A stretch of DNA of 64,000 bases from the sequence record KY499642.1; one strand, given 5' to 3'. Both the position numbers and the translations under genes were made by a program. The notes under the pieces are model-generated. The model ran no database searches. It saw nothing but the letters and a program-made list of their open reading frames with translations, and was not told the origin of the DNA. Of this stretch, positions 1,825 through 59,570 are shown piece by piece. Numbering within the stretch: the first letter of the stretch is position 1; every line of letters starts with the position of its first letter.

Positions 1825-1842
1825 TTCCGGTCAAAAATAATA

Positions 1843-1865
1843 CGGATATATATCATCTGAGTGTA
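1843..1865 (+). promoter_or_regulatory. Conserved phage promoter motif copy 1 (probable early promoter)
   Basis: cggatatatatcatctgagtgta; one of five copies of CRGNYATATWTCATYWNNGTGWW, located after a terminator and before a small-gene cluster. Confidence 0.7.
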
Positions 1866-1914
1866 ATGCGTACGATGTAGCACGCAGTGATATGACTATT
1901 AATTGGGAGTTAAT

Positions 1915-10163: not shown

Positions 10164-10676
10164 ATGATGCTAAAGTATATCAGATATATTTTATCTACAC
10201 GAAGAGCTGCTAAGAAATATCAGCAACACACTGAACGGTTACATAAGATGTCAACAGATGATGTCATAGGAATCGCTCTGTGGTACTGTGAGGACTGGTT
10301 GGAGTATCGTAATACGTTTACCCTAGAAGATAGGTTAAGCCTCAAGATACGCCATAAGGCTCCAAATGCAGGCGCTGTTTTAGACGCTGTTCAATCAGTG
10401 TATGATGTGGTCATCAATTCCGATGAACGTTACATCAAGATGTTACCCGCGTGGTGCGACAACCGACCTAATGTCAAAGTGGCAGACAGATGGTTGGTTG
10501 ACGAAGGCGGTTATTTTGTTAAGTTGGAAAATGTAATTAAACAATTACATGAACAGCTGTCAGCGATTCATTCCGCTGTAAACGACCCTAAGAATGAAGA
10601 CTACAAATATCATTACACTAAAAAACCAAAGGCGGTATACGAAAGTGTAACCGACCTATTAAAACATTTCCATTAA
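10164..10676 (+). CDS. Hypothetical protein (170 aa)
   Basis: ORF divergent from 9706..10146. Confidence 0.7.
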   Translation: MMLKYIRYILSTRRAAKKYQQHTERLHKMSTDDVIGIALWYCEDWLEYRNTFTLEDRLSLKIRHKAPNAGAVLDAVQSVYDVVINSDERYIKMLPAWCDNRPNVKVADRWLVDEGGYFVKLENVIKQLHEQLSAIHSAVNDPKNEDYKYHYTKKPKAVYESVTDLLKHFH

Positions 10677-36101: not shown

Positions 36102-36488
36102 ATGTTCAAGCCGAAAATAGATAAGGCTTCTGTCATTCACCTGAAAGACAGTCAGCTGACATTTGGTAAGGAAAACAGAACTTCACGTTGGTGGGTTCGT
36201 TATGAGGGTCTAGAACAGCCTGTATGGTGTTCTACCGAACAGAAACAGTTAATTGGACTCATTGTACAGCTAACGACTTTAAATGGCTTACGTGCGCTTA
36301 GGCGCAATGTTAGTCCACATGAAAGATATCGTAAAGAAATCATCGAAGGGTTGAATCATGAAATCAATGCCTGCACTCGTCTGATTAACCGTTTAGTTTC
36401 CATCACGGATAATCGAATGGATCAGAAAGTTAAGTTCATCTTCGACTCCACTGACAACATCACCACATTAGACGGATGGGCGGCCTAG
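36102..36488 (+). CDS. Hypothetical protein (128 aa)
   Basis: SD aaggag. Confidence 0.75.
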   Translation: MFKPKIDKASVIHLKDSQLTFGKENRTSRWWVRYEGLEQPVWCSTEQKQLIGLIVQLTTLNGLRALRRNVSPHERYRKEIIEGLNHEINACTRLINRLVSITDNRMDQKVKFIFDSTDNITTLDGWAA

Positions 36489-36506
36489 CCCCATCCTAAG
36501 AATCTT

Positions 36507-36529
36507 CAGGTATATTTCATCTAGGTGAA
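36507..36529 (+). promoter_or_regulatory. Conserved phage promoter motif copy 2
   Basis: caggtatatttcatctaggtgaa. Confidence 0.7.
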
Positions 36530-36623
36530 GAACTGCTATAAAAATACATGGCAGTATATTGTTTGCTGAGAAGAATCAGTAGAACTCACGTTAACGTTAA
36601 AACATCATAAAGGAAAAACTACA

Positions 36624-37061
36624 ATGGCTAAACTAAATGAACAAGCACAAGCAATCTTTGAACGTCTTGGCGATGTTTCTTTCGACAGCAACCACATCCC
36701 ATCTGTGGCTACTCCAAACGCTGTGACTGAAACCATGAAAGAGAAGGCGAAGGTTACTGATGAACAGCTTGACATTCTAGCTAGTGTAATCAGCGACGGT
36801 TCGGCAGCCGTTACTGCGAAACTGGGTGACCCAATGATTCGTCGCATTCAAGACAACGAAGACTTGGCAAATCTGGATTTCGATTTGGACACTCCTATCG
36901 TACAACTAGGTCTGAGCGTATCTCGCCCAACCAAAGAAGACGGTAAAGAACTGACTCGTGAACAATACCGTGCAAACATTGGTGCGCGTGTTACTGTACG
37001 CGGCCTTGACTCAACTAACGCAGTTGCGGACGAACTCGCTAGCATGTGGGAAGGCTTGTAA
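36624..37061 (+). CDS. Hypothetical protein (145 aa), probably highly expressed early gene
   Basis: A-rich leader with SD aagga; strongly biased codon usage; own terminator. Confidence 0.8.
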   Translation: MAKLNEQAQAIFERLGDVSFDSNHIPSVATPNAVTETMKEKAKVTDEQLDILASVISDGSAAVTAKLGDPMIRRIQDNEDLANLDFDLDTPIVQLGLSVSRPTKEDGKELTREQYRANIGARVTVRGLDSTNAVADELASMWEGL

Positions 37062-37073
37062 GTAGCACAACCC

Positions 37074-37110
37074 GACGGCAGGATTACCTGCCGTCATCCA
37101 TTCCTTTTTA
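37074..37110 (+). terminator. Terminator
   Basis: gacggcagg-atta-cctgccgtc, with a T tract about 10 nt later. Confidence 0.7.
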
Positions 37111-37127
37111 TTTCTGGAGATACTCTA

Positions 37128-37406
37128 ATGGCAGAAACAAACGTAGGCGTCTCAGTAGACGTGGCATTCCTAGTACTGACTCTGGTAATGACTGAGAAGT
37201 CGTTAGGCGAGCGTGATGAAACCATGCGCTCAGATATCGTTGATGATATCCAAGAAGAGCTTCAGTGTGATGAAGAAACTGCAAAAGAAAAGTTCGATGA
37301 AGTACACGAACGTGCAGTAAACTCACTAAACGAATTCAGCGACATCTTCGAAGGCGATGTTGACTTTAACGAAATTGGCGAAGAAGGTGAAGAAGATGCC
37401 GAATAA
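37128..37406 (+). CDS. Very acidic small protein (92 aa)
   Basis: SD ggag; 30 D/E versus 6 K/R by count. Confidence 0.75.
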   Translation: MAETNVGVSVDVAFLVLTLVMTEKSLGERDETMRSDIVDDIQEELQCDEETAKEKFDEVHERAVNSLNEFSDIFEGDVDFNEIGEEGEEDAE

Positions 37407-37686
37407 AAATATTGCATTCCTACGTACATCACAGGTAGCGAAAGAAGACGTTTACCGTAAAGTGCCTGCTGAAGTTGAAGGCGAGAAACCAACTGAAGAG
37501 CTGGTCTGTCGCAAAGGTGAAGTGAATCCAGAAACTGCGGTATTCACTGGCCCATGGTACCGTGATGAGTTGGAGAAATGGATTGACCATTCTTACGACA
37601 TGAACGGTGGTGCTAACACTGAATGGAAACTGGTTGAAGAAGAAGATCTTCCTAAAGACTTCAAAGATACCAACATCCTTCAATAA
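37396..37686 (+). CDS. Hypothetical protein (96 aa)
   Basis: ATG at 37396 (MPNKNIAF), overlapping the upstream stop. Confidence 0.75.
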   Translation: MPNKNIAFLRTSQVAKEDVYRKVPAEVEGEKPTEELVCRKGEVNPETAVFTGPWYRDELEKWIDHSYDMNGGANTEWKLVEEEDLPKDFKDTNILQ

Positions 37687-37700
37687 TCAATTCTAAAATC

Positions 37701-37727
37701 GAGGTGGCTTAGGCTACCTCTTTTTTT
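37701..37727 (+). terminator. Rho-independent terminator
   Basis: gaggtggc-ttag-gctacctc then T7. Confidence 0.85.
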
Positions 37728-37740
37728 GTGGGAGTTCAGC

Positions 37741-37938
37741 ATGGAACACTTTTCTAAGATAGATACAACAGTTCTTTATAAATGGGGCGGTGGTCAATAT
37801 GGTTTAGCTGCTATTGGTAAACCTTTAAATGAGAAACGACTTAGCCGTTATCGCGAGAATTCAAAAGACCCTGCACTTAGTCGTTGTAGTAGTGGCGGCA
37901 GTAACGTGTATGCTCCGGGGTCAAAGCTATGGACGTAA
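37741..37938 (+). CDS. GQYG-family small protein A (65 aa)
   Basis: SD gggag, ATG at 37741; LYKWGGGQYGLAAIGKPL. Confidence 0.7.
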   Translation: MEHFSKIDTTVLYKWGGGQYGLAAIGKPLNEKRLSRYRENSKDPALSRCSSGGSNVYAPGSKLWT

Positions 37939-38138
37939 AACTAGATTCTGAAACTAACACAATCTACACCAATGGCCAATACGGTTGTTCAGTCAAAGGT
38001 AAAACAAAGACTGAAGCTGAGATGGATGAGTTCCGTCATTACGGTACAATACGTCCAGAACGTAAAACACATAAATCACATTACTCAAACGACTTTGTGA
38101 TTTTCAGACGGGAGAACCTAGATGGGAAATGCAACTAA
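37929..38138 (+). CDS. GQYG-family small protein B (69 aa)
   Basis: IYTNGQYGCSVKGK; overlaps A and C. Confidence 0.7.
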   Translation: MDVKLDSETNTIYTNGQYGCSVKGKTKTEAEMDEFRHYGTIRPERKTHKSHYSNDFVIFRRENLDGKCN

Positions 38139-38325
38139 GTCAGACATCGAGAAGTCCTTAGACGAAGGTTACCTTTATGCTGCTAAGGTAATTAAGGGTA
38201 ATGGGCAGTATGGTCTTGCGGCAGTAACTCGCGGTAAACCACTGTCGAAAGAATTCATAGATGACCTACGTGAAGAAGTGATCTCCAAACCTCAGCCCAT
38301 TAACTATGAGTTTGGACGTTTCTAA
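38122..38325 (+). CDS. GQYG-family small protein C (67 aa)
   Basis: SD gggag; VIKGNGQYGLAAVTRGKPL. Confidence 0.7.
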   Translation: MGNATKSDIEKSLDEGYLYAAKVIKGNGQYGLAAVTRGKPLSKEFIDDLREEVISKPQPINYEFGRF

Positions 38326-38337
38326 AAGTGGTATCTC

Positions 38338-38547
38338 ATGAATCTACTCGGAAGTACAAAGGTGATGGCGATTTACGTCAAGCATCATGGAGGGCAGTCA
38401 GGAATCTCTTGCTGCTCTAAGGTTCCTACTGGTCAAACAGGTAAGGATGAAATAAAAACAGCAAGAGCTATTCTCAATCGTGAGTTGAAAGGTAAACGTG
38501 GTGACAAGCACGTTGAATTCAACTACGGTGCGTGGAATGGCAGTTGA
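38338..38547 (+). CDS. GQ[S]G-family small protein D (69 aa)
   Basis: IYVKHHGGQSGISCCSK; ends before a terminator. Confidence 0.65.
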   Translation: MNLLGSTKVMAIYVKHHGGQSGISCCSKVPTGQTGKDEIKTARAILNRELKGKRGDKHVEFNYGAWNGS

Positions 38548-38550
38548 CAC

Positions 38551-38597
38551 AAAAAGACGAGGATGGCCGAAGCCATCCTCGCTCTTTATTTTTTTTG
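38551..38597. terminator. Bidirectional terminator
   Basis: A5, gaggatggc-cgaa-gccatcctc, T tract. Confidence 0.85.
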
Positions 38598-38599
38598 TC

Positions 38600-39451
38600 T
38601 TAAGAGACAACTTCTTTTGCAGCTGCATCAGCGTAATCGTGGTAACCAACTTTAGTTGCTTCCACGTCAGCGTCGATTTCAGATGCGAACGACTTACGAG
38701 TCATTGGGTTCAGACCAGAACGGTTTAGGCGGTCAAGGTCTTCTTGTGCAAACAGCTTAACGCCGTAAGAACATTGTTGTAGAGAAGTGAAGCCGATGCC
38801 CATCTCTACAGTTTCACCCGGAGCTTCAAGGTCTTTACGACCGTCGTCAGGACCGTTCAGACGTGGAGCCATGTTGGTACATAGCCATGCGTTTTGAACG
38901 TAACGGTGAAGCGGGTCTGGCTCGTAGTACAGTACAGTTGCACAGTACAAGTCAGGTAGAGCATCGCCAACTTCTTCACTTAGCAGTGAAACAAGTGGAA
39001 CCTGAGCAGCAGGGTCTTGCATACCGTAACGTAGCCAGAAATCCAGCAGCGTTTTGTATACTTGGCCGTACTTATCAGTCACAGTGTGAGTGATTTCAGA
39101 TTGCTCTTCAGAAACCTTAGTCAGGTCGAACTGGCGGTGGCCAGCTGCACCAATTGCAGTCTCTGCGAATTCAGCAGTAAGCGCTTTGTTCAAGCCGTCC
39201 ACTTTTGAGTGAACTTCGAAGAACGTTTTGATTGCGCGACGGAAGACATCTGGAGCTTCCATGTACTGAACCCAACGAGGAAATTCAACAACGCGTACGA
39301 TAACATTACGTTTAACGTAGTGGGCGTTCTGAATGTACTTCCCTTGGTTAACAAGCGGACCCATTTGTCCGCCTTCCAGTGCATTAACCATCGGGGCTGT
39401 AGATAGAGCGCTAAAGTTAGCGTCCATCATGCGGTCTTTCAAATCAGCCAT
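38600..39451 (-). CDS. Tail tube protein (phiKZ gp30-like)
   Basis: 283 aa directly downstream of the sheath gene; typical GGQxG and YEPDP...AWLCTNMAP segments. Confidence 0.85.
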   Translation of the reverse strand: MADLKDRMMDANFSALSTAPMVNALEGGQMGPLVNQGKYIQNAHYVKRNVIVRVVEFPRWVQYMEAPDVFRRAIKTFFEVHSKVDGLNKALTAEFAETAIGAAGHRQFDLTKVSEEQSEITHTVTDKYGQVYKTLLDFWLRYGMQDPAAQVPLVSLLSEEVGDALPDLYCATVLYYEPDPLHRYVQNAWLCTNMAPRLNGPDDGRKDLEAPGETVEMGIGFTSLQQCSYGVKLFAQEDLDRLNRSGLNPMTRKSFASEIDADVEATKVGYHDYADAAAKEVVS

Positions 39452-39455
39452 TTAC

Positions 39456-41498
39456 TTAGCCCTCTTGGAAACGGTGAGCCACGATAGTAGTCTTGAAGAC
39501 AGTCTTCATTACTGCACCGTAGACGTGGATTCGGATCGAGATAGAGTTGCCGTTTGACTTATCTTCGTCTGAGAAGTACGGTTCAAAGTCAAGGTTAACA
39601 ACGCCGTCGTAACGACCTTCGGTTTTCAGGATAAGCTTGTCGCGTACCATCTTAGCGATTTGGCTATCGGTCATGTCGGACACGCCAGACATTTCCGCCC
39701 ATACCTGCTCAGATAGGTACTCAAGGTTACCGATGATTGGTGCGATCAACCAGTTGTTCAGAATAGAACGGTCTTCGTCGTACACTGTGTACAGTGCAGG
39801 GAAGTGGTAACGCCATTGGTCGAACGAGCGCAAGCTGATCAAACCTGCTTCCCAGTCAGATACGTAAACAGGGAATGGCTTGTAATCCAAGTTGAAGTCG
39901 TAACCTTCGGTAATGACAGTCAACTCGCCGCGAGAGAACTTGTTGCGTGACAAGAACTTGCCTTGAGAAGAACCTGCGTATGCAGCGAACTTCGCAGCCA
40001 GTGAGTAAGACACTGGAACACGCTCTTTGTACTGGCTGTTGTTCAAGTACATGCTGTGACCCAATAGGTGACCGCGCATACAAGTTGTGCCGTACTTAGT
40101 CGATTCTGGCAACGCACGCAGCATCGCTGATAGAGCAATCTTCATTGCTTCTTCAGTTTGCATTGAGTTGATGCCTTGGTCGAATACGTGAGTACACAAC
40201 ACGAGGTTAGTGTTCTTCATGCGGCCAATGTAGTTGGTCAGTGCTTCTTTGGTATCAACCGAGAAGCCAGAATCCCACAGGAAGCTTGATGGGTACTTCA
40301 GCAGGTTCAGGTAGTTAACCGTACCAGTACCGAAGTTGATCATCTCTTTACGAACCAATTTGTCGAACGTTTCGTTCGTCATGGTACCGTCAGAACCGCC
40401 GATTAGGTAATGAGTGTGTGAATCAGTTAAGATTTCGCCACCTTCAGTGCCGTCGTCAACGTGCAGACCATTATATGGATTACCATACAGGTCTAGACCG
40501 GAGAAGATATCCACCATGTAAGGGTTTGTCAGTGTCTCGTCATCCTTGATGAACGTTTGTGCCTTAGTAAGCACAAGCTCCAAGTTTGAACGGTACACGT
40601 ACATGTCCTGTACAGGGCCAAGTTGTGGAATGTAACCCGGATCAGGGTTCATGTTGCGGTAAGCCGCAAGTGCCACATCTTCGAAATCCAACTCAGTACG
40701 CATTGGGCGGTAGTACGCTTCTGGTTTGAACGAGAAGAATACTGAAGTCTGACCTTTGACGGTACGAGTGATAGATGGTGACATGCCCGGTACAGTCTGG
40801 TCAACAAACTGTAGGGTCAGTAGACGACCACCTACTTCCATTGCGTAGTCAGCAGGAACAGGAGTCATAGACTTCTCGTTACCACAAGACAGACGCAGAC
40901 CGAAGTCATTTGGTTTCGCACCAGGGTATGGAGCAGGCATATCCAAGATTGGGTAAATCGTGGACTTGGTGCCAGCAGCATTAGTTAGCGTACCTTCAAA
41001 GATACGACCTTGCTTGAACTGGCCAGCTTCGTCAGAGAACGCGCCGAAGTGCCATGCGATTAGCAGGCCGTCGATTTGTCCTTTAACTTTTGGTGCGCCG
41101 TTTTCGTACAACACAGAACCATCTGCGTTGCGTTCATAGTCAGGAACCTTAGTTTCTAACACTTCTGCGTACAGACGTAGAGATGCTGTTTTAGCATCAT
41201 CTGGAACCAAACGTTGAACCATCATTTCATTCGCTTTGCGATTGAATAGTTCAAGGTAAGGAGTGTTGAAAGTTGTGTACTTGTTCTTAAGTCCAACGAC
41301 TTCGTCACCGTACATAGCTTTCAGATTGTCCCCAGAAACAACATAAGCGTTGTTAGGGTCACCCTTCGGGCTGAATGTAAACATCAGCGGAAGGTGAATA
41401 GGAACCCCTGCTTGTGTAAGTACTTTTTCTGGTACTGACTGATCGTCCGTACCGTACTTCACGTTCTGAGGAGTACCATTCTTGATGATTTCAGACAT
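39456..41498 (-). CDS. Tail sheath protein (phiKZ gp29-like)
   Basis: 680 aa; P.HLPL, LIGGSDGTM and WDSGFS sheath-type segments; synteny with tube and terminase. Confidence 0.85.
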   Translation of the reverse strand: MSEIIKNGTPQNVKYGTDDQSVPEKVLTQAGVPIHLPLMFTFSPKGDPNNAYVVSGDNLKAMYGDEVVGLKNKYTTFNTPYLELFNRKANEMMVQRLVPDDAKTASLRLYAEVLETKVPDYERNADGSVLYENGAPKVKGQIDGLLIAWHFGAFSDEAGQFKQGRIFEGTLTNAAGTKSTIYPILDMPAPYPGAKPNDFGLRLSCGNEKSMTPVPADYAMEVGGRLLTLQFVDQTVPGMSPSITRTVKGQTSVFFSFKPEAYYRPMRTELDFEDVALAAYRNMNPDPGYIPQLGPVQDMYVYRSNLELVLTKAQTFIKDDETLTNPYMVDIFSGLDLYGNPYNGLHVDDGTEGGEILTDSHTHYLIGGSDGTMTNETFDKLVRKEMINFGTGTVNYLNLLKYPSSFLWDSGFSVDTKEALTNYIGRMKNTNLVLCTHVFDQGINSMQTEEAMKIALSAMLRALPESTKYGTTCMRGHLLGHSMYLNNSQYKERVPVSYSLAAKFAAYAGSSQGKFLSRNKFSRGELTVITEGYDFNLDYKPFPVYVSDWEAGLISLRSFDQWRYHFPALYTVYDEDRSILNNWLIAPIIGNLEYLSEQVWAEMSGVSDMTDSQIAKMVRDKLILKTEGRYDGVVNLDFEPYFSDEDKSNGNSISIRIHVYGAVMKTVFKTTIVAHRFQEG

Positions 41499-49499: not shown

Positions 49500-49521
49500 G
49501 TCTCCAGAGTAAAAAAATATT

Positions 49522-49544
49522 CAGATATATATCATTATGGTGAA
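49522..49544 (+). promoter_or_regulatory. Conserved phage promoter motif copy 3
   Basis: cagatatatatcattatggtgaa. Confidence 0.7.
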
Positions 49545-49577
49545 GAAATCATCTAAACCTTTTAATGGGAGCTTACC

Positions 49578-52811: not shown

Positions 52812-52869
52812 AAGGACTCCCATATTTGTGATACACAGGATTTGCTGCCAGACGTATCCTAAATAGGTT

Positions 52870-52892
52870 CAGTTATATTTCATTAATGTGAT
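52870..52892 (+). promoter_or_regulatory. Conserved phage promoter motif copy 4
   Basis: cagttatatttcattaatgtgat. Confidence 0.7.
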
Positions 52893-52928
52893 ATATCAAC
52901 CACCCGTTCTATTATTAAGGAGATCACC

Positions 52929-59426: not shown

Positions 59427-59528
59427 AGAACCCTCCTTCATCGCAGTCATAGCATGGCTTAAGCTTACGTAAATAATAACATAACAGCGATTCCTATAGG
59501 GGAGTTTGGCTATGAATAAAAGTATTGT

Positions 59529-59551
59529 CAGACATATTTCATCATAGTGAT
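59529..59551 (+). promoter_or_regulatory. Conserved phage promoter motif copy 5
   Basis: cagacatatttcatcatagtgat. Confidence 0.7.
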
Positions 59552-59570
59552 GAATCCTTGGAGATAATAA

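What the first reader, a model, noticed from the sequence alone, without database searches (positions are those of the whole stretch)
37741..38547. Tandem array of four divergent micro-proteins sharing a GQ[Y/S]G loop, next to the tail-tube gene
Seen in sequence: four overlapping or adjacent 65-69 aa ORFs, bracketed by terminators at 37701 and 38559, align on strand-GQxG-strand-K-helix. The segments are A LYKWGGGQYGLAAIGKPLNEKRLSRYR, B IYTNGQYGCSVKGKTKTEAEMDEFR, C VIKGNGQYGLAAVTRGKPLSKEFIDDLR and D IYVKHHGGQSGISCCSKVPTGQTGKDEIKTAR. Each has a hydrophobic-x-x-hydrophobic-Arg helix 17, 17, 19 and 21 residues after the loop, while the flanks have diverged. This pattern suggests a duplicated, diversifying family, as expected in a host-phage arms race. 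Three resemblances, all inference: (i) the convergent tail-tube protein carries GGQMG at residues 27-31, so these could be tail-tube decoys for defence systems that sense or block tail tubes (DSR2 is activated by a tail-tube protein); (ii) GxGxYG followed by Lys and a helix is the protein-kinase glycine-rich ATP loop (ABL has LGGGQYG), suggesting mini nucleotide-binding sponges; (iii) GGQ is the release-factor catalytic loop (eRF1 has KHGRGGQS, D has KHHGGQS), suggesting ribosome or PrmC mimicry. I do not recognise a named family.
Basis: partly seen in the sequence, partly recalled or inferred. Interest (0 to 1): 0.82.

Follow-up and report, generated by a model that had tools for sequence, protein, structure and literature searches.

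The report
Variable micro-protein gene cassette in jumbo phage

Summary
The window is Vibrio phage pVa-21 (KY499642.1), a phiKZ-like, nucleus-forming jumbo phage.

**Observation.** The four ORFs, both terminators and the tail-tube GGQMG are exactly as described.

**Homology.**
- A, B and C are homologous (hhalign 97.6%, E=2.7e-12).
- D shares only the GQxG hairpin (P about 0.004-0.016), a predicted beta-beta-alpha-beta topology and a C-terminal aromatic-Gly strand. It is probably, not provably, a divergent member.

**Coding evidence.** Every ortholog class is under purifying selection (dN/dS 0.03-0.35). ORF A is missing from the GenBank annotation.

**Variation between relatives.**
- Eighteen related loci show about nine arrangements. 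B-, C- and D-type genes are always present; A, J2, J3 and one unrelated OB-fold gene are optional.
- The cassette always sits between a covarying hairpin terminator and a bidirectional terminator facing the tail tube.
- An early-promoter-like motif lies 1.2 kb upstream.

**Known families.**
- The family occurs only in pVa-21-like phages.
- It has no Pfam, PHROG, NCBIfam, PDB or Foldseek match.
- The decoy, kinase-loop and release-factor readings fail: GGQ and GxGxxG are not conserved in the family, and the tube motif is not conserved among tube homologs.

**Best reading (inference).** These are early accessory host-directed binder proteins. This is an ordinary kind of phage feature built from a new orphan family.

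The parts
36499..36536 (+). Early-promoter-like AT-rich motif heading the transcription unit that runs into the cassette
   Evidence: A PWM built from 11 exact-core sites scores this site 26.5 bits, rank 13 of about 21 genome sites, all on the + strand and none in front of the capsid, sheath or tube genes. The core is invariant in 7 diverged loci. A review says such motifs mark vRNAP early promoters (PMC7598289).
36624..37686 (+). Three conserved acidic small genes (pVa21_174-176; 145, 92 and 96 aa) upstream of the cassette
   Evidence: Annotation. pI 4.0-4.6, and gp175 has net charge about -24. Present in every related locus that extends this far upstream. No family hit.
37701..37720 (+). Intrinsic-terminator hairpin followed by T7, then directly the Shine-Dalgarno GGGAG of ORF A
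   Evidence: The stem is kept through base changes in relatives.
37741..37938 (+). ORF A, 65 aa, GQYG family. Not annotated in KY499642.1
   Evidence: Family HMM 4e-24. Orthologs in L004 and L011 with dN/dS 0.14-0.35. GGGAG lies 6 nt before the ATG.
37929..38138 (+). ORF B, 69 aa (pVa21_177), GQYG family. A B-type gene is present in every array seen whole
   Evidence: dN/dS 0.08-0.23.
38122..38325 (+). ORF C, 67 aa (pVa21_178), GQYG family. A C-type gene is present in every locus
   Evidence: dN/dS 0.03-0.26. AF2 model pLDDT 72.6, helix then beta-hairpin, helix, strand.
38338..38547 (+). ORF D, 69 aa (pVa21_179, annotated from 38365). Probable divergent member; a D-type gene is present in every locus that reaches that end
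   Evidence: dN/dS 0.09-0.20. AF2 model pLDDT 63.4 with the same beta-beta-alpha-beta order. Synonymous changes in the 9 codons upstream of the annotated start favour the longer form. Sequence link to A-C is not significant.
38558..38581 (.). Bidirectional terminator shared by the cassette and the convergent tail-tube gene
   Evidence: Conserved in all loci checked.
38600..39451 (-). Tail tube protein (context only, not part of the family)
   Evidence: PF23806 at 2.5e-86. GGQMG at residues 27-31 is not conserved in Derbicusvirus tubes.
39456..41498 (-). Tail sheath (context)
   Evidence: PF20961 and phrog_3242.

Best explanation
The four ORFs are genuine genes for soluble proteins of 62-72 aa. 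They form a lineage-specific family that I call GQ[YF]G, and it is confined to pVa-21-like Vibrio chimalliviruses.

Shown:
- A, B and C are paralogs too old to retain DNA similarity.
- Each ortholog class is under purifying selection.
- The genes are packed for coupled translation, in a cassette that starts right after a conserved hairpin terminator and ends at a bidirectional terminator facing the tail tube.
- Related phages keep a B-type, a C-type and a D-type gene but gain or lose A, J2 and J3 types, and in one case an unrelated OB-fold gene.

Inferred:
- D is a divergent member with the same beta-hairpin, helix, strand fold.
- The cassette is transcribed by read-through from an early, virion-RNA-polymerase-type promoter 1.2 kb upstream, together with three very acidic small proteins.
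- The proteins act in the infected cell as accessory binders of host or phage macromolecules. The invariant hairpin tip (G-Q-aromatic-G) and the helix Arg would form the common fold core or contact surface, and the divergent C-terminal parts would give each paralog its own specificity.
- The constant, translationally coupled B-C-D trio may work as a hetero-oligomer.
For: - Identity of the window.
- Homology of A, B and C.
- Purifying selection.
- Arrangements in 18 loci.
- A mosaic member, P0023, joins a J3-like N-terminal half (50% identity to P0020) to a C-type C-terminal half.
- Terminators, their covariation and the ribosome-binding sites.
- Shared predicted topology of C and D.
- Early-promoter-like motif: about 21 sites, all on the + strand, in front of operons that hold RNA-polymerase-subunit and regulator genes and not in front of capsid, sheath or tube genes. 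Its meaning comes from PMC7598289.
- No other copy in the 232-kb genome.
- Family confined to this clade: 11 clusters among 1.84 billion representatives. There are no D-type relatives in IMG/VR, GTDB genomes or JGI metagenomes.
- No signal peptide or membrane segment is apparent; GRAVY is -0.6 to -1.2.
Against: - There are no expression data of any kind.
- A credible terminator stands between the predicted promoter and the cassette, so early expression depends on unproven read-through. Middle and late promoters of such phages cannot be predicted.
- D's membership rests on a short motif and on models of only moderate confidence (pLDDT 63-73).
- No homolog of known function exists, so 'binder of host or phage macromolecules' is argued from context only.
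- pI ranges from 4.7 to 10.7 across types, which argues against one shared charged ligand.
- The constant presence of B, C and D fits a lineage-core role as well as it fits an arms-race role.
Confidence: 0.45

Rival explanations
1. Small virion- or tail-assembly-associated proteins, such as chaperones or decoration of the tube or sheath, placed next to the tube and sheath genes because they work with them.
For: The cassette abuts the tube gene in every locus. B, C and D types are constant there. The wider region holds the prohead protease and other virion genes.
Against: The orientation is convergent and the transcription unit is separate. The nearest cultured phages with homologous tube and sheath (Phobos, CR5) carry unrelated genes or nothing at this spot. 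The family is absent from the other 230 phage records that have a homologous tube. No PHROG structural family is hit. Copy number varies between near-identical tubes (97.5% identical in JHP1101).
Confidence: 0.15
2. Small nucleic-acid-binding proteins (regulators or RNA/DNA chaperones) that act on phage transcripts or DNA.
For: A and D types are strongly basic (pI 9.6-10.7). The proteins are small, with a beta-sheet plus a helix.
Against: J2, some C and some J3 types are acidic (pI 4.7-6.2). There is no match to any DNA- or RNA-binding family in Pfam, NCBIfam, PDB or Foldseek.
Confidence: 0.12
3. One reading: tail-tube decoys that mimic the tube's GGQMG segment to blunt defences that sense tube proteins.
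For: A and D share GGQxG with residues 27-31 of the adjacent tube.
Against: Likeness does not extend past five residues, and the tube ORF is never hit by single sequences or profiles. B, C, B' and many others have N, D, K or S in place of the first Gly. Tube homologs at 44-46% identity lack the motif. GGQxG also occurs in the major capsid protein and another ORF.
Confidence: 0.03
4. One reading: a nucleotide-binding Gly-loop sponge, or a release-factor/PrmC GGQ mimic.
For: A and C fit GxGxxG, and A and D contain GGQ.
Against: Neither pattern is conserved in the family; only G-Q-x-G and the helix Arg are invariant. No kinase, P-loop or release-factor hit appears at E up to 1-10 in Pfam, NCBIfam, the PDB sequence search or Foldseek. 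At 62-72 aa, the proteins are too small for a kinase N-lobe (established knowledge).
Confidence: 0.04
5. Spurious ORFs or decaying gene remnants without function.
For: They are short, ORF A is unannotated, and no database family exists.
Against: dN/dS is 0.03-0.35 at dS up to above 1 in all classes. Reading frames are intact in 18 loci. Ribosome-binding sites and coupled starts are conserved.
Confidence: 0.02

Closest known systems
Hyperplastic accessory regions of large lytic phages: clusters of small, fast-turning-over, often early genes of T4-like and phiKZ-like phages (established knowledge)
   Same: Tight arrays of ORFs of 60-70 aa without database matches. Gene content differs between close relatives. 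The site lies at the junction of two transcription units, downstream of an early-type promoter motif.
   Different: Here most cassette genes are paralogs of one family. Three of the types are never lost, which is unusual for purely dispensable accessory genes.
Small phage-encoded host-factor binders with a three-stranded sheet and one helix, for example T7 Gp2, the inhibitor of host RNA polymerase (recalled from memory as a lead only)
   Same: About 64 aa, soluble, with a beta-beta-alpha-beta-like topology and made early.
   Different: No sequence or Foldseek match to any such PDB entry. Membership is not claimed.
Protein G/L B1-type beta-grasp mini-domains
   Same: A hairpin-helix-strand order. 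One family member gave a chance-level Pfam hit to PF02246 (E=0.077).
   Different: There is only one C-terminal strand instead of a second hairpin. No significant sequence or structure match.

Membership tests
Class-I release factor GGQ loop / PrmC substrate mimic | Strictly conserved Gly-Gly-Gln | tested here: not met
   The residue before GQ is N, S, D, K or A in B, C, B', J3 and several D-type members.
Class-I release factor GGQ loop / PrmC substrate mimic | Detectable likeness to the RF-1/eRF1 catalytic domain | tested here: not met
   No hit in Pfam, NCBIfam or the PDB sequence search (E up to 10), nor in Foldseek against the PDB.
Protein-kinase glycine-rich loop / nucleotide-binding Gly loop | Conserved GxGxxG followed by the kinase N-lobe | tested here: not met
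   The first Gly is absent in B, B', J2 and J3 types. No Pkinase or P-loop hit. The proteins are 62-72 aa.
Phage tail tube protein PF23806 (as mimic or fragment) | Similarity to the tube beyond a short motif, with the motif conserved in tubes | tested here: not met
   The tube ORF is not hit by family sequences or profiles. The motif is absent in Phobos and CR5 tubes.
GQ[YF]G micro-protein family (defined here) | Profile-level homology among members | tested here: met
   For A, B, C, B', J2, J3 and the mosaic forms: hhalign 97.6%, E=2.7e-12, and HMM scores from 1e-12 to 1e-34.
GQ[YF]G micro-protein family (defined here) | D-type belongs to it | tested here: inconclusive
   hhalign P=0.004-0.016 with probability 3-9%. 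The predicted element order is the same and GQxG lies at the hairpin. A hydrophobic-x-aromatic-x-aromatic-Gly strand is shared with C.
Early (virion-RNAP) transcription unit of a phiKZ-like phage | Conserved AT-rich promoter motif upstream | tested here: met
   The site at 36499-36536 scores 26.5 bits and is conserved in 7 loci. The meaning of the motif comes from PMC7598289.
Early (virion-RNAP) transcription unit of a phiKZ-like phage | The transcript actually covers the cassette early in infection | not testable with these tools
   The terminator at 37701-37720 intervenes, and there are no transcript data for this phage.
Known anti-defence protein families | Homology to a characterised anti-defence protein | tested here: not met
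   Nothing in Pfam, PHROGs, NCBIfam, PDB or BFVD. No dedicated anti-defence library was available.

The most novel reading that the evidence does not exclude
The constant, translationally coupled B-C-D trio, with optional A, J2 and J3 subunits, forms a hetero-oligomeric early effector of nucleus-forming Vibrio phages. It would use the GQ[YF]G hairpins to bind a host target, making it a new family of host-takeover or counter-defence proteins with a swappable subunit set.
Probability: 0.15. Interest if true: 0.6.

Novelty: new member of a known kind. Interest (0 to 1): 0.3.

Why it matters
If the family proves to be host-directed, it would add a compact new fold family to the accessory proteins of nucleus-forming jumbo phages, which are largely uncharacterised. 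It would also give a natural series of cassette variants (three to five genes) that could be correlated with host strains. As it stands, the result corrects the annotation: ORF A and a 128-aa gene are missing from the record, and D probably starts 27 nt earlier. It also gives a predicted early-promoter motif for this phage lineage and removes three attractive but unsupported mimicry ideas.

Tried and rejected
- **Family libraries.** Pfam, PHROGs and NCBIfam scans of A-D and of 24 family members gave no consistent hit.
- **Solved structures by sequence.** PDB searches with both profiles gave only chance hits to butyrophilin at E above 1.
- **Fold comparison.** Foldseek of the C model against PDB and BFVD, and of the D model against BFVD, returned only the self entry A0A1S6L1Z8 for C. 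The D model found neither itself nor C, so Foldseek could not test the D-C likeness.
- **Searches in the phage collection.** tblastn of C and D found only pVa-21 and pVp-JHP1101.
- **Wider searches.** Searches of 5.8 billion and 1.84 billion proteins found only the same clade. IMG/VR, GTDB and JGI scans with the D-type found nothing, and L023 was a false lead. The broad alignment A8 was too diverse for locus scanning.
- **DNA and RNA level.** There are no DNA-level repeats between the copies and no Rfam family in the region.
- **A false promoter lead.** An 8-mer shared by the sheath leader and the leader upstream of gp174 was not enriched and was dropped.
- **Literature.** Papers on pVa-21 and pVa-22 do not mention these genes and give no virion proteome or transcriptome.

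Full report
**Origin of the window.** The region 36500-40000 is 100% identical to Vibrio phage pVa-21 (KY499642.1; record coordinate = window + 124000). It is 90% identical to Vibrio phage pVp-JHP1101. pVa-21 is a phiKZ-like jumbo phage with multisubunit RNA polymerases (PMC6472347) and is counted among the nucleus-forming chimalliviruses (bioRxiv 10.1101/2024.03.21.585822). The two convergent genes are the tail tube (PF23806, E=2.5e-86) and the tail sheath (PF20961; phrog_3242).

**Check of the observation.**
- All four ORFs, their sizes and the quoted segments are correct.
- Both terminators are real by the pattern scan and by folding. The hairpin at 37701-37720 folds at -14.4 kcal/mol (z -4.1) and is followed by T7. 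The hairpin at 38558-38581 folds at -23 and -25 kcal/mol on the two strands.
- A/B and B/C overlap by 10 and 17 nt, and C/D are 12 nt apart. A and C are preceded by GGGAG.
- GenBank annotates B, C and a shorter D (pVa21_177-179) as hypothetical proteins and does not annotate A.

**Are the four homologous?**
- Within the 1007 stop-to-stop ORFs of the window, A finds C at E=1.5e-3. Copies from the sister phage link A and B at 7.5e-5 and 1.5e-4.
- With all relatives collected, a profile of A/B-like members matches a profile of C-like members at 97.6% probability, E=2.7e-12, over 38 columns that span the hairpin and the helix. A, B and C are therefore paralogs.
- D is different. hhalign gives only P=0.004-0.016 (probability 3-9%) over 16-22 columns. 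The ABC profile scores D at E=2.3 among the 3582 ORFs of the whole genome.
- Four things favour D as a divergent member:
  - It has the same size and sits next to C.
  - It carries the [GN]GQxG motif. The motif is rare, with about 1.3 expected and 8 found in the six-frame ORFs of the genome, 4 of them in the array.
  - AlphaFold2 gives the same element order in both. C (pLDDT 72.6) has H8-14, E19-26, E29-36, H43-55, E60-64. D (pLDDT 63.4) has E8-16, E21-29, H33-50, E57-64. In both, GQxG lies at the hairpin turn.
  - Its last strand has the same hydrophobic-x-aromatic-x-aromatic-Gly pattern as C.
- I rate D's membership at roughly three in four. It is not shown.

**Are they genes?**
- For every ortholog class (A, B, B', J2, J3, J3', C, D), pairwise Nei-Gojobori estimates give dN/dS of 0.03-0.42. 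All but one low-divergence pair fall at or below 0.35. dS often exceeds 0.5-1.
- That is clear purifying selection. It also contradicts the idea that the orthologs themselves are diversifying.
- The nine codons upstream of D's annotated start change mostly synonymously or conservatively across loci.
- There is no DNA-level repeat between the copies and no Rfam family in the region. The duplications are old.

**Relatives and cassette dynamics.**
- Searches of 5.8 billion clustered proteins and of 1.84 billion representatives with full HMMER found only members from pVa-21-like phage contigs. All are unnamed.
- IMG/VR, GTDB genomes and JGI metagenomes gave nothing for the D-type.
- The phage collection holds the family only in pVa-21 and JHP1101. 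232 records carry a homologous tube.
- Reading 18 loci gives about nine arrangements:

| Arrangement | Loci |
|---|---|
| A-B-C-D | pVa-21, L004-L006 |
| A-B-C*-D | L011; L013 (contig ends after C*) |
| B-C*-D (contig begins just before B) | L012 |
| B-C-D | L003 |
| OB-fold gene, then B-C-D | L007 |
| B'-J3-C-D | L008, L010 |
| B'-J2-C-D | L009 |
| B'-J2-J3-C-D | JHP1101 |
| B''-J3'-C-D or B''-J3'-C'-D | L014-L016 |
| B-J3''-gap-C*-D | L024, L025 |

- A B-type, a C-type and a D-type gene are always present. A, J2 and J3 types come and go.
- C* (P0023) is a mosaic. Its first 40 residues are 50% identical to the J3-like P0020, and its C-terminal half is C-type. Recombination between paralogs therefore occurs.
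- The whole pVa-21 genome, searched in five separate pieces, has no further copy.
- In the nearest cultured relatives outside the clade (Erwinia phage Phobos, Cronobacter phage CR5), the same convergent junction holds unrelated genes or an empty 600-bp stretch. The site is a general plasticity spot.

**Boundaries and transcription.**
- The upstream hairpin is conserved, with base changes that keep the stem. It is followed in every locus by a T-run and then immediately by the ribosome-binding site of whichever gene comes first, including the OB-fold gene of L007.
- There is no room for a promoter between the terminator and ORF A.
- A k-mer enrichment over 109 upstream regions of the genome revealed an AT-rich motif (core AGATATATATCAT, then GTG four bases on).
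- A PWM built from its 11 exact-core sites finds about 21 sites, all on the + strand. They stand in front of operons that include regulator and RNA-polymerase-subunit genes, and not in front of capsid, sheath or tube genes.
- The review PMC7598289 states that such conserved AT-rich motifs, found bioinformatically in each RNAP-encoding jumbo phage, are the early promoters read by the virion RNA polymerase. It adds that middle and late promoters cannot be predicted.
- One such site (26.5 bits, rank 13) lies at 36499-36536. Its core is invariant in seven loci whose coding regions differ at dS 0.4 to above 1.
- It heads three conserved, very acidic small genes (pI 4.0-4.6; gp175 has net charge about -24 in 92 aa), then the terminator, then the cassette.
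- The cassette is therefore plausibly an early, read-through-dependent extension of this unit. This is inference, and no transcript data exist.

- (i) Tail-tube decoy. The tube's GGQMG is real. No family sequence or profile hits the tube ORF. Tube homologs at 44-46% identity read GSGMQG or DSGMQG there. GGQxG also occurs in the major capsid protein and another ORF.
- (ii) Kinase Gly loop. GxGxxG holds in A and C only, because the first Gly is T, I, S or M elsewhere.
- (iii) Release-factor GGQ. GGQ is not conserved: NGQ, SGQ, DGQ, KGQ and AGQ all occur.
- No kinase, P-loop or release-factor match appears in Pfam, NCBIfam, the PDB sequence search or Foldseek. All three are rejected as family properties.

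**What it most likely is.**
- Shown: a clade-restricted family of small soluble proteins under purifying selection, sitting in a variable, tightly coupled cassette.
- Inferred: early accessory proteins that bind host or phage macromolecules. The invariant G-Q-aromatic-G hairpin and the helix Arg would be the common core or contact, and the divergent C-terminal parts would be specificity elements. The constant B-C-D trio and its coupled translation hint at a hetero-oligomer.
They are scored in their own sections.

**Novelty and interest.** The protein family is new in the sense that no library or paper describes it. A cassette of orphan micro-genes at a junction of transcription units is an ordinary feature of large lytic phages. 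Without any functional link, I score interest at 0.3.

Noticed in passing
window 36102-36488 (+): A 128-aa ORF, preceded by AAGGAG and flanked by hairpins, is not annotated in KY499642.1. It is annotated in pVp-JHP1101 (pVpJHP1101_180) and called in every related locus that extends that far upstream. It has no family hit.
   Followed up: partly
window 37128-37406 (+), pVa21_175: An extremely acidic 92-aa protein (pI 4.05, net charge about -24), flanked by two more acidic small proteins (pI 4.5 and 4.6) in the same predicted early unit. The composition is reminiscent of DNA-mimic proteins. No homolog was found.
   Followed up: partly
window 1835-1872, 10173-10210, 36499-36536, 49514-49551, 52862-52899, 59521-59558; further sites in L019-L022: An AT-rich motif (core AGATATATATCAT, then GTG four bases on) occurs at about 21 sites, all on the + strand, roughly 40-105 nt before gene starts. 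It is probably the early (virion RNA polymerase) promoter consensus of pVa-21-like phages, and the papers read here do not describe it.
   Followed up: partly
L007 2688-2990 (+): In one relative the variable slot just after the hairpin terminator carries a stand-alone 100-aa OB-fold gene that matches only the N-terminal domain of RecD2 helicase (TIGR01448 positions 1-72, E=2e-11; PF23139).
   Followed up: partly
window 41485-41498: The annotated start of pVa21_182 (+) overlaps the start of the tail-sheath gene (-). Relatives call a shorter 298-aa product (PF25614 PhiKZ_VTX) that leaves a leader of about 90 nt, so the pVa-21 start is probably set too far upstream.
   Followed up: no
L024 3211-3433 and L025 1876-2098: A stretch of about 220 nt without a called gene lies inside the cassette, between the J3-like and C*-type genes. 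It is possibly a remnant of a lost paralog.
   Followed up: no
window 36525-36556 (+): A conserved hairpin (-10.5 kcal/mol, z -2.2) lies in the leader just downstream of the promoter-like motif. The whole 130-nt leader is more conserved (88% mean column identity) than synonymous sites of the neighbouring genes.
   Followed up: no
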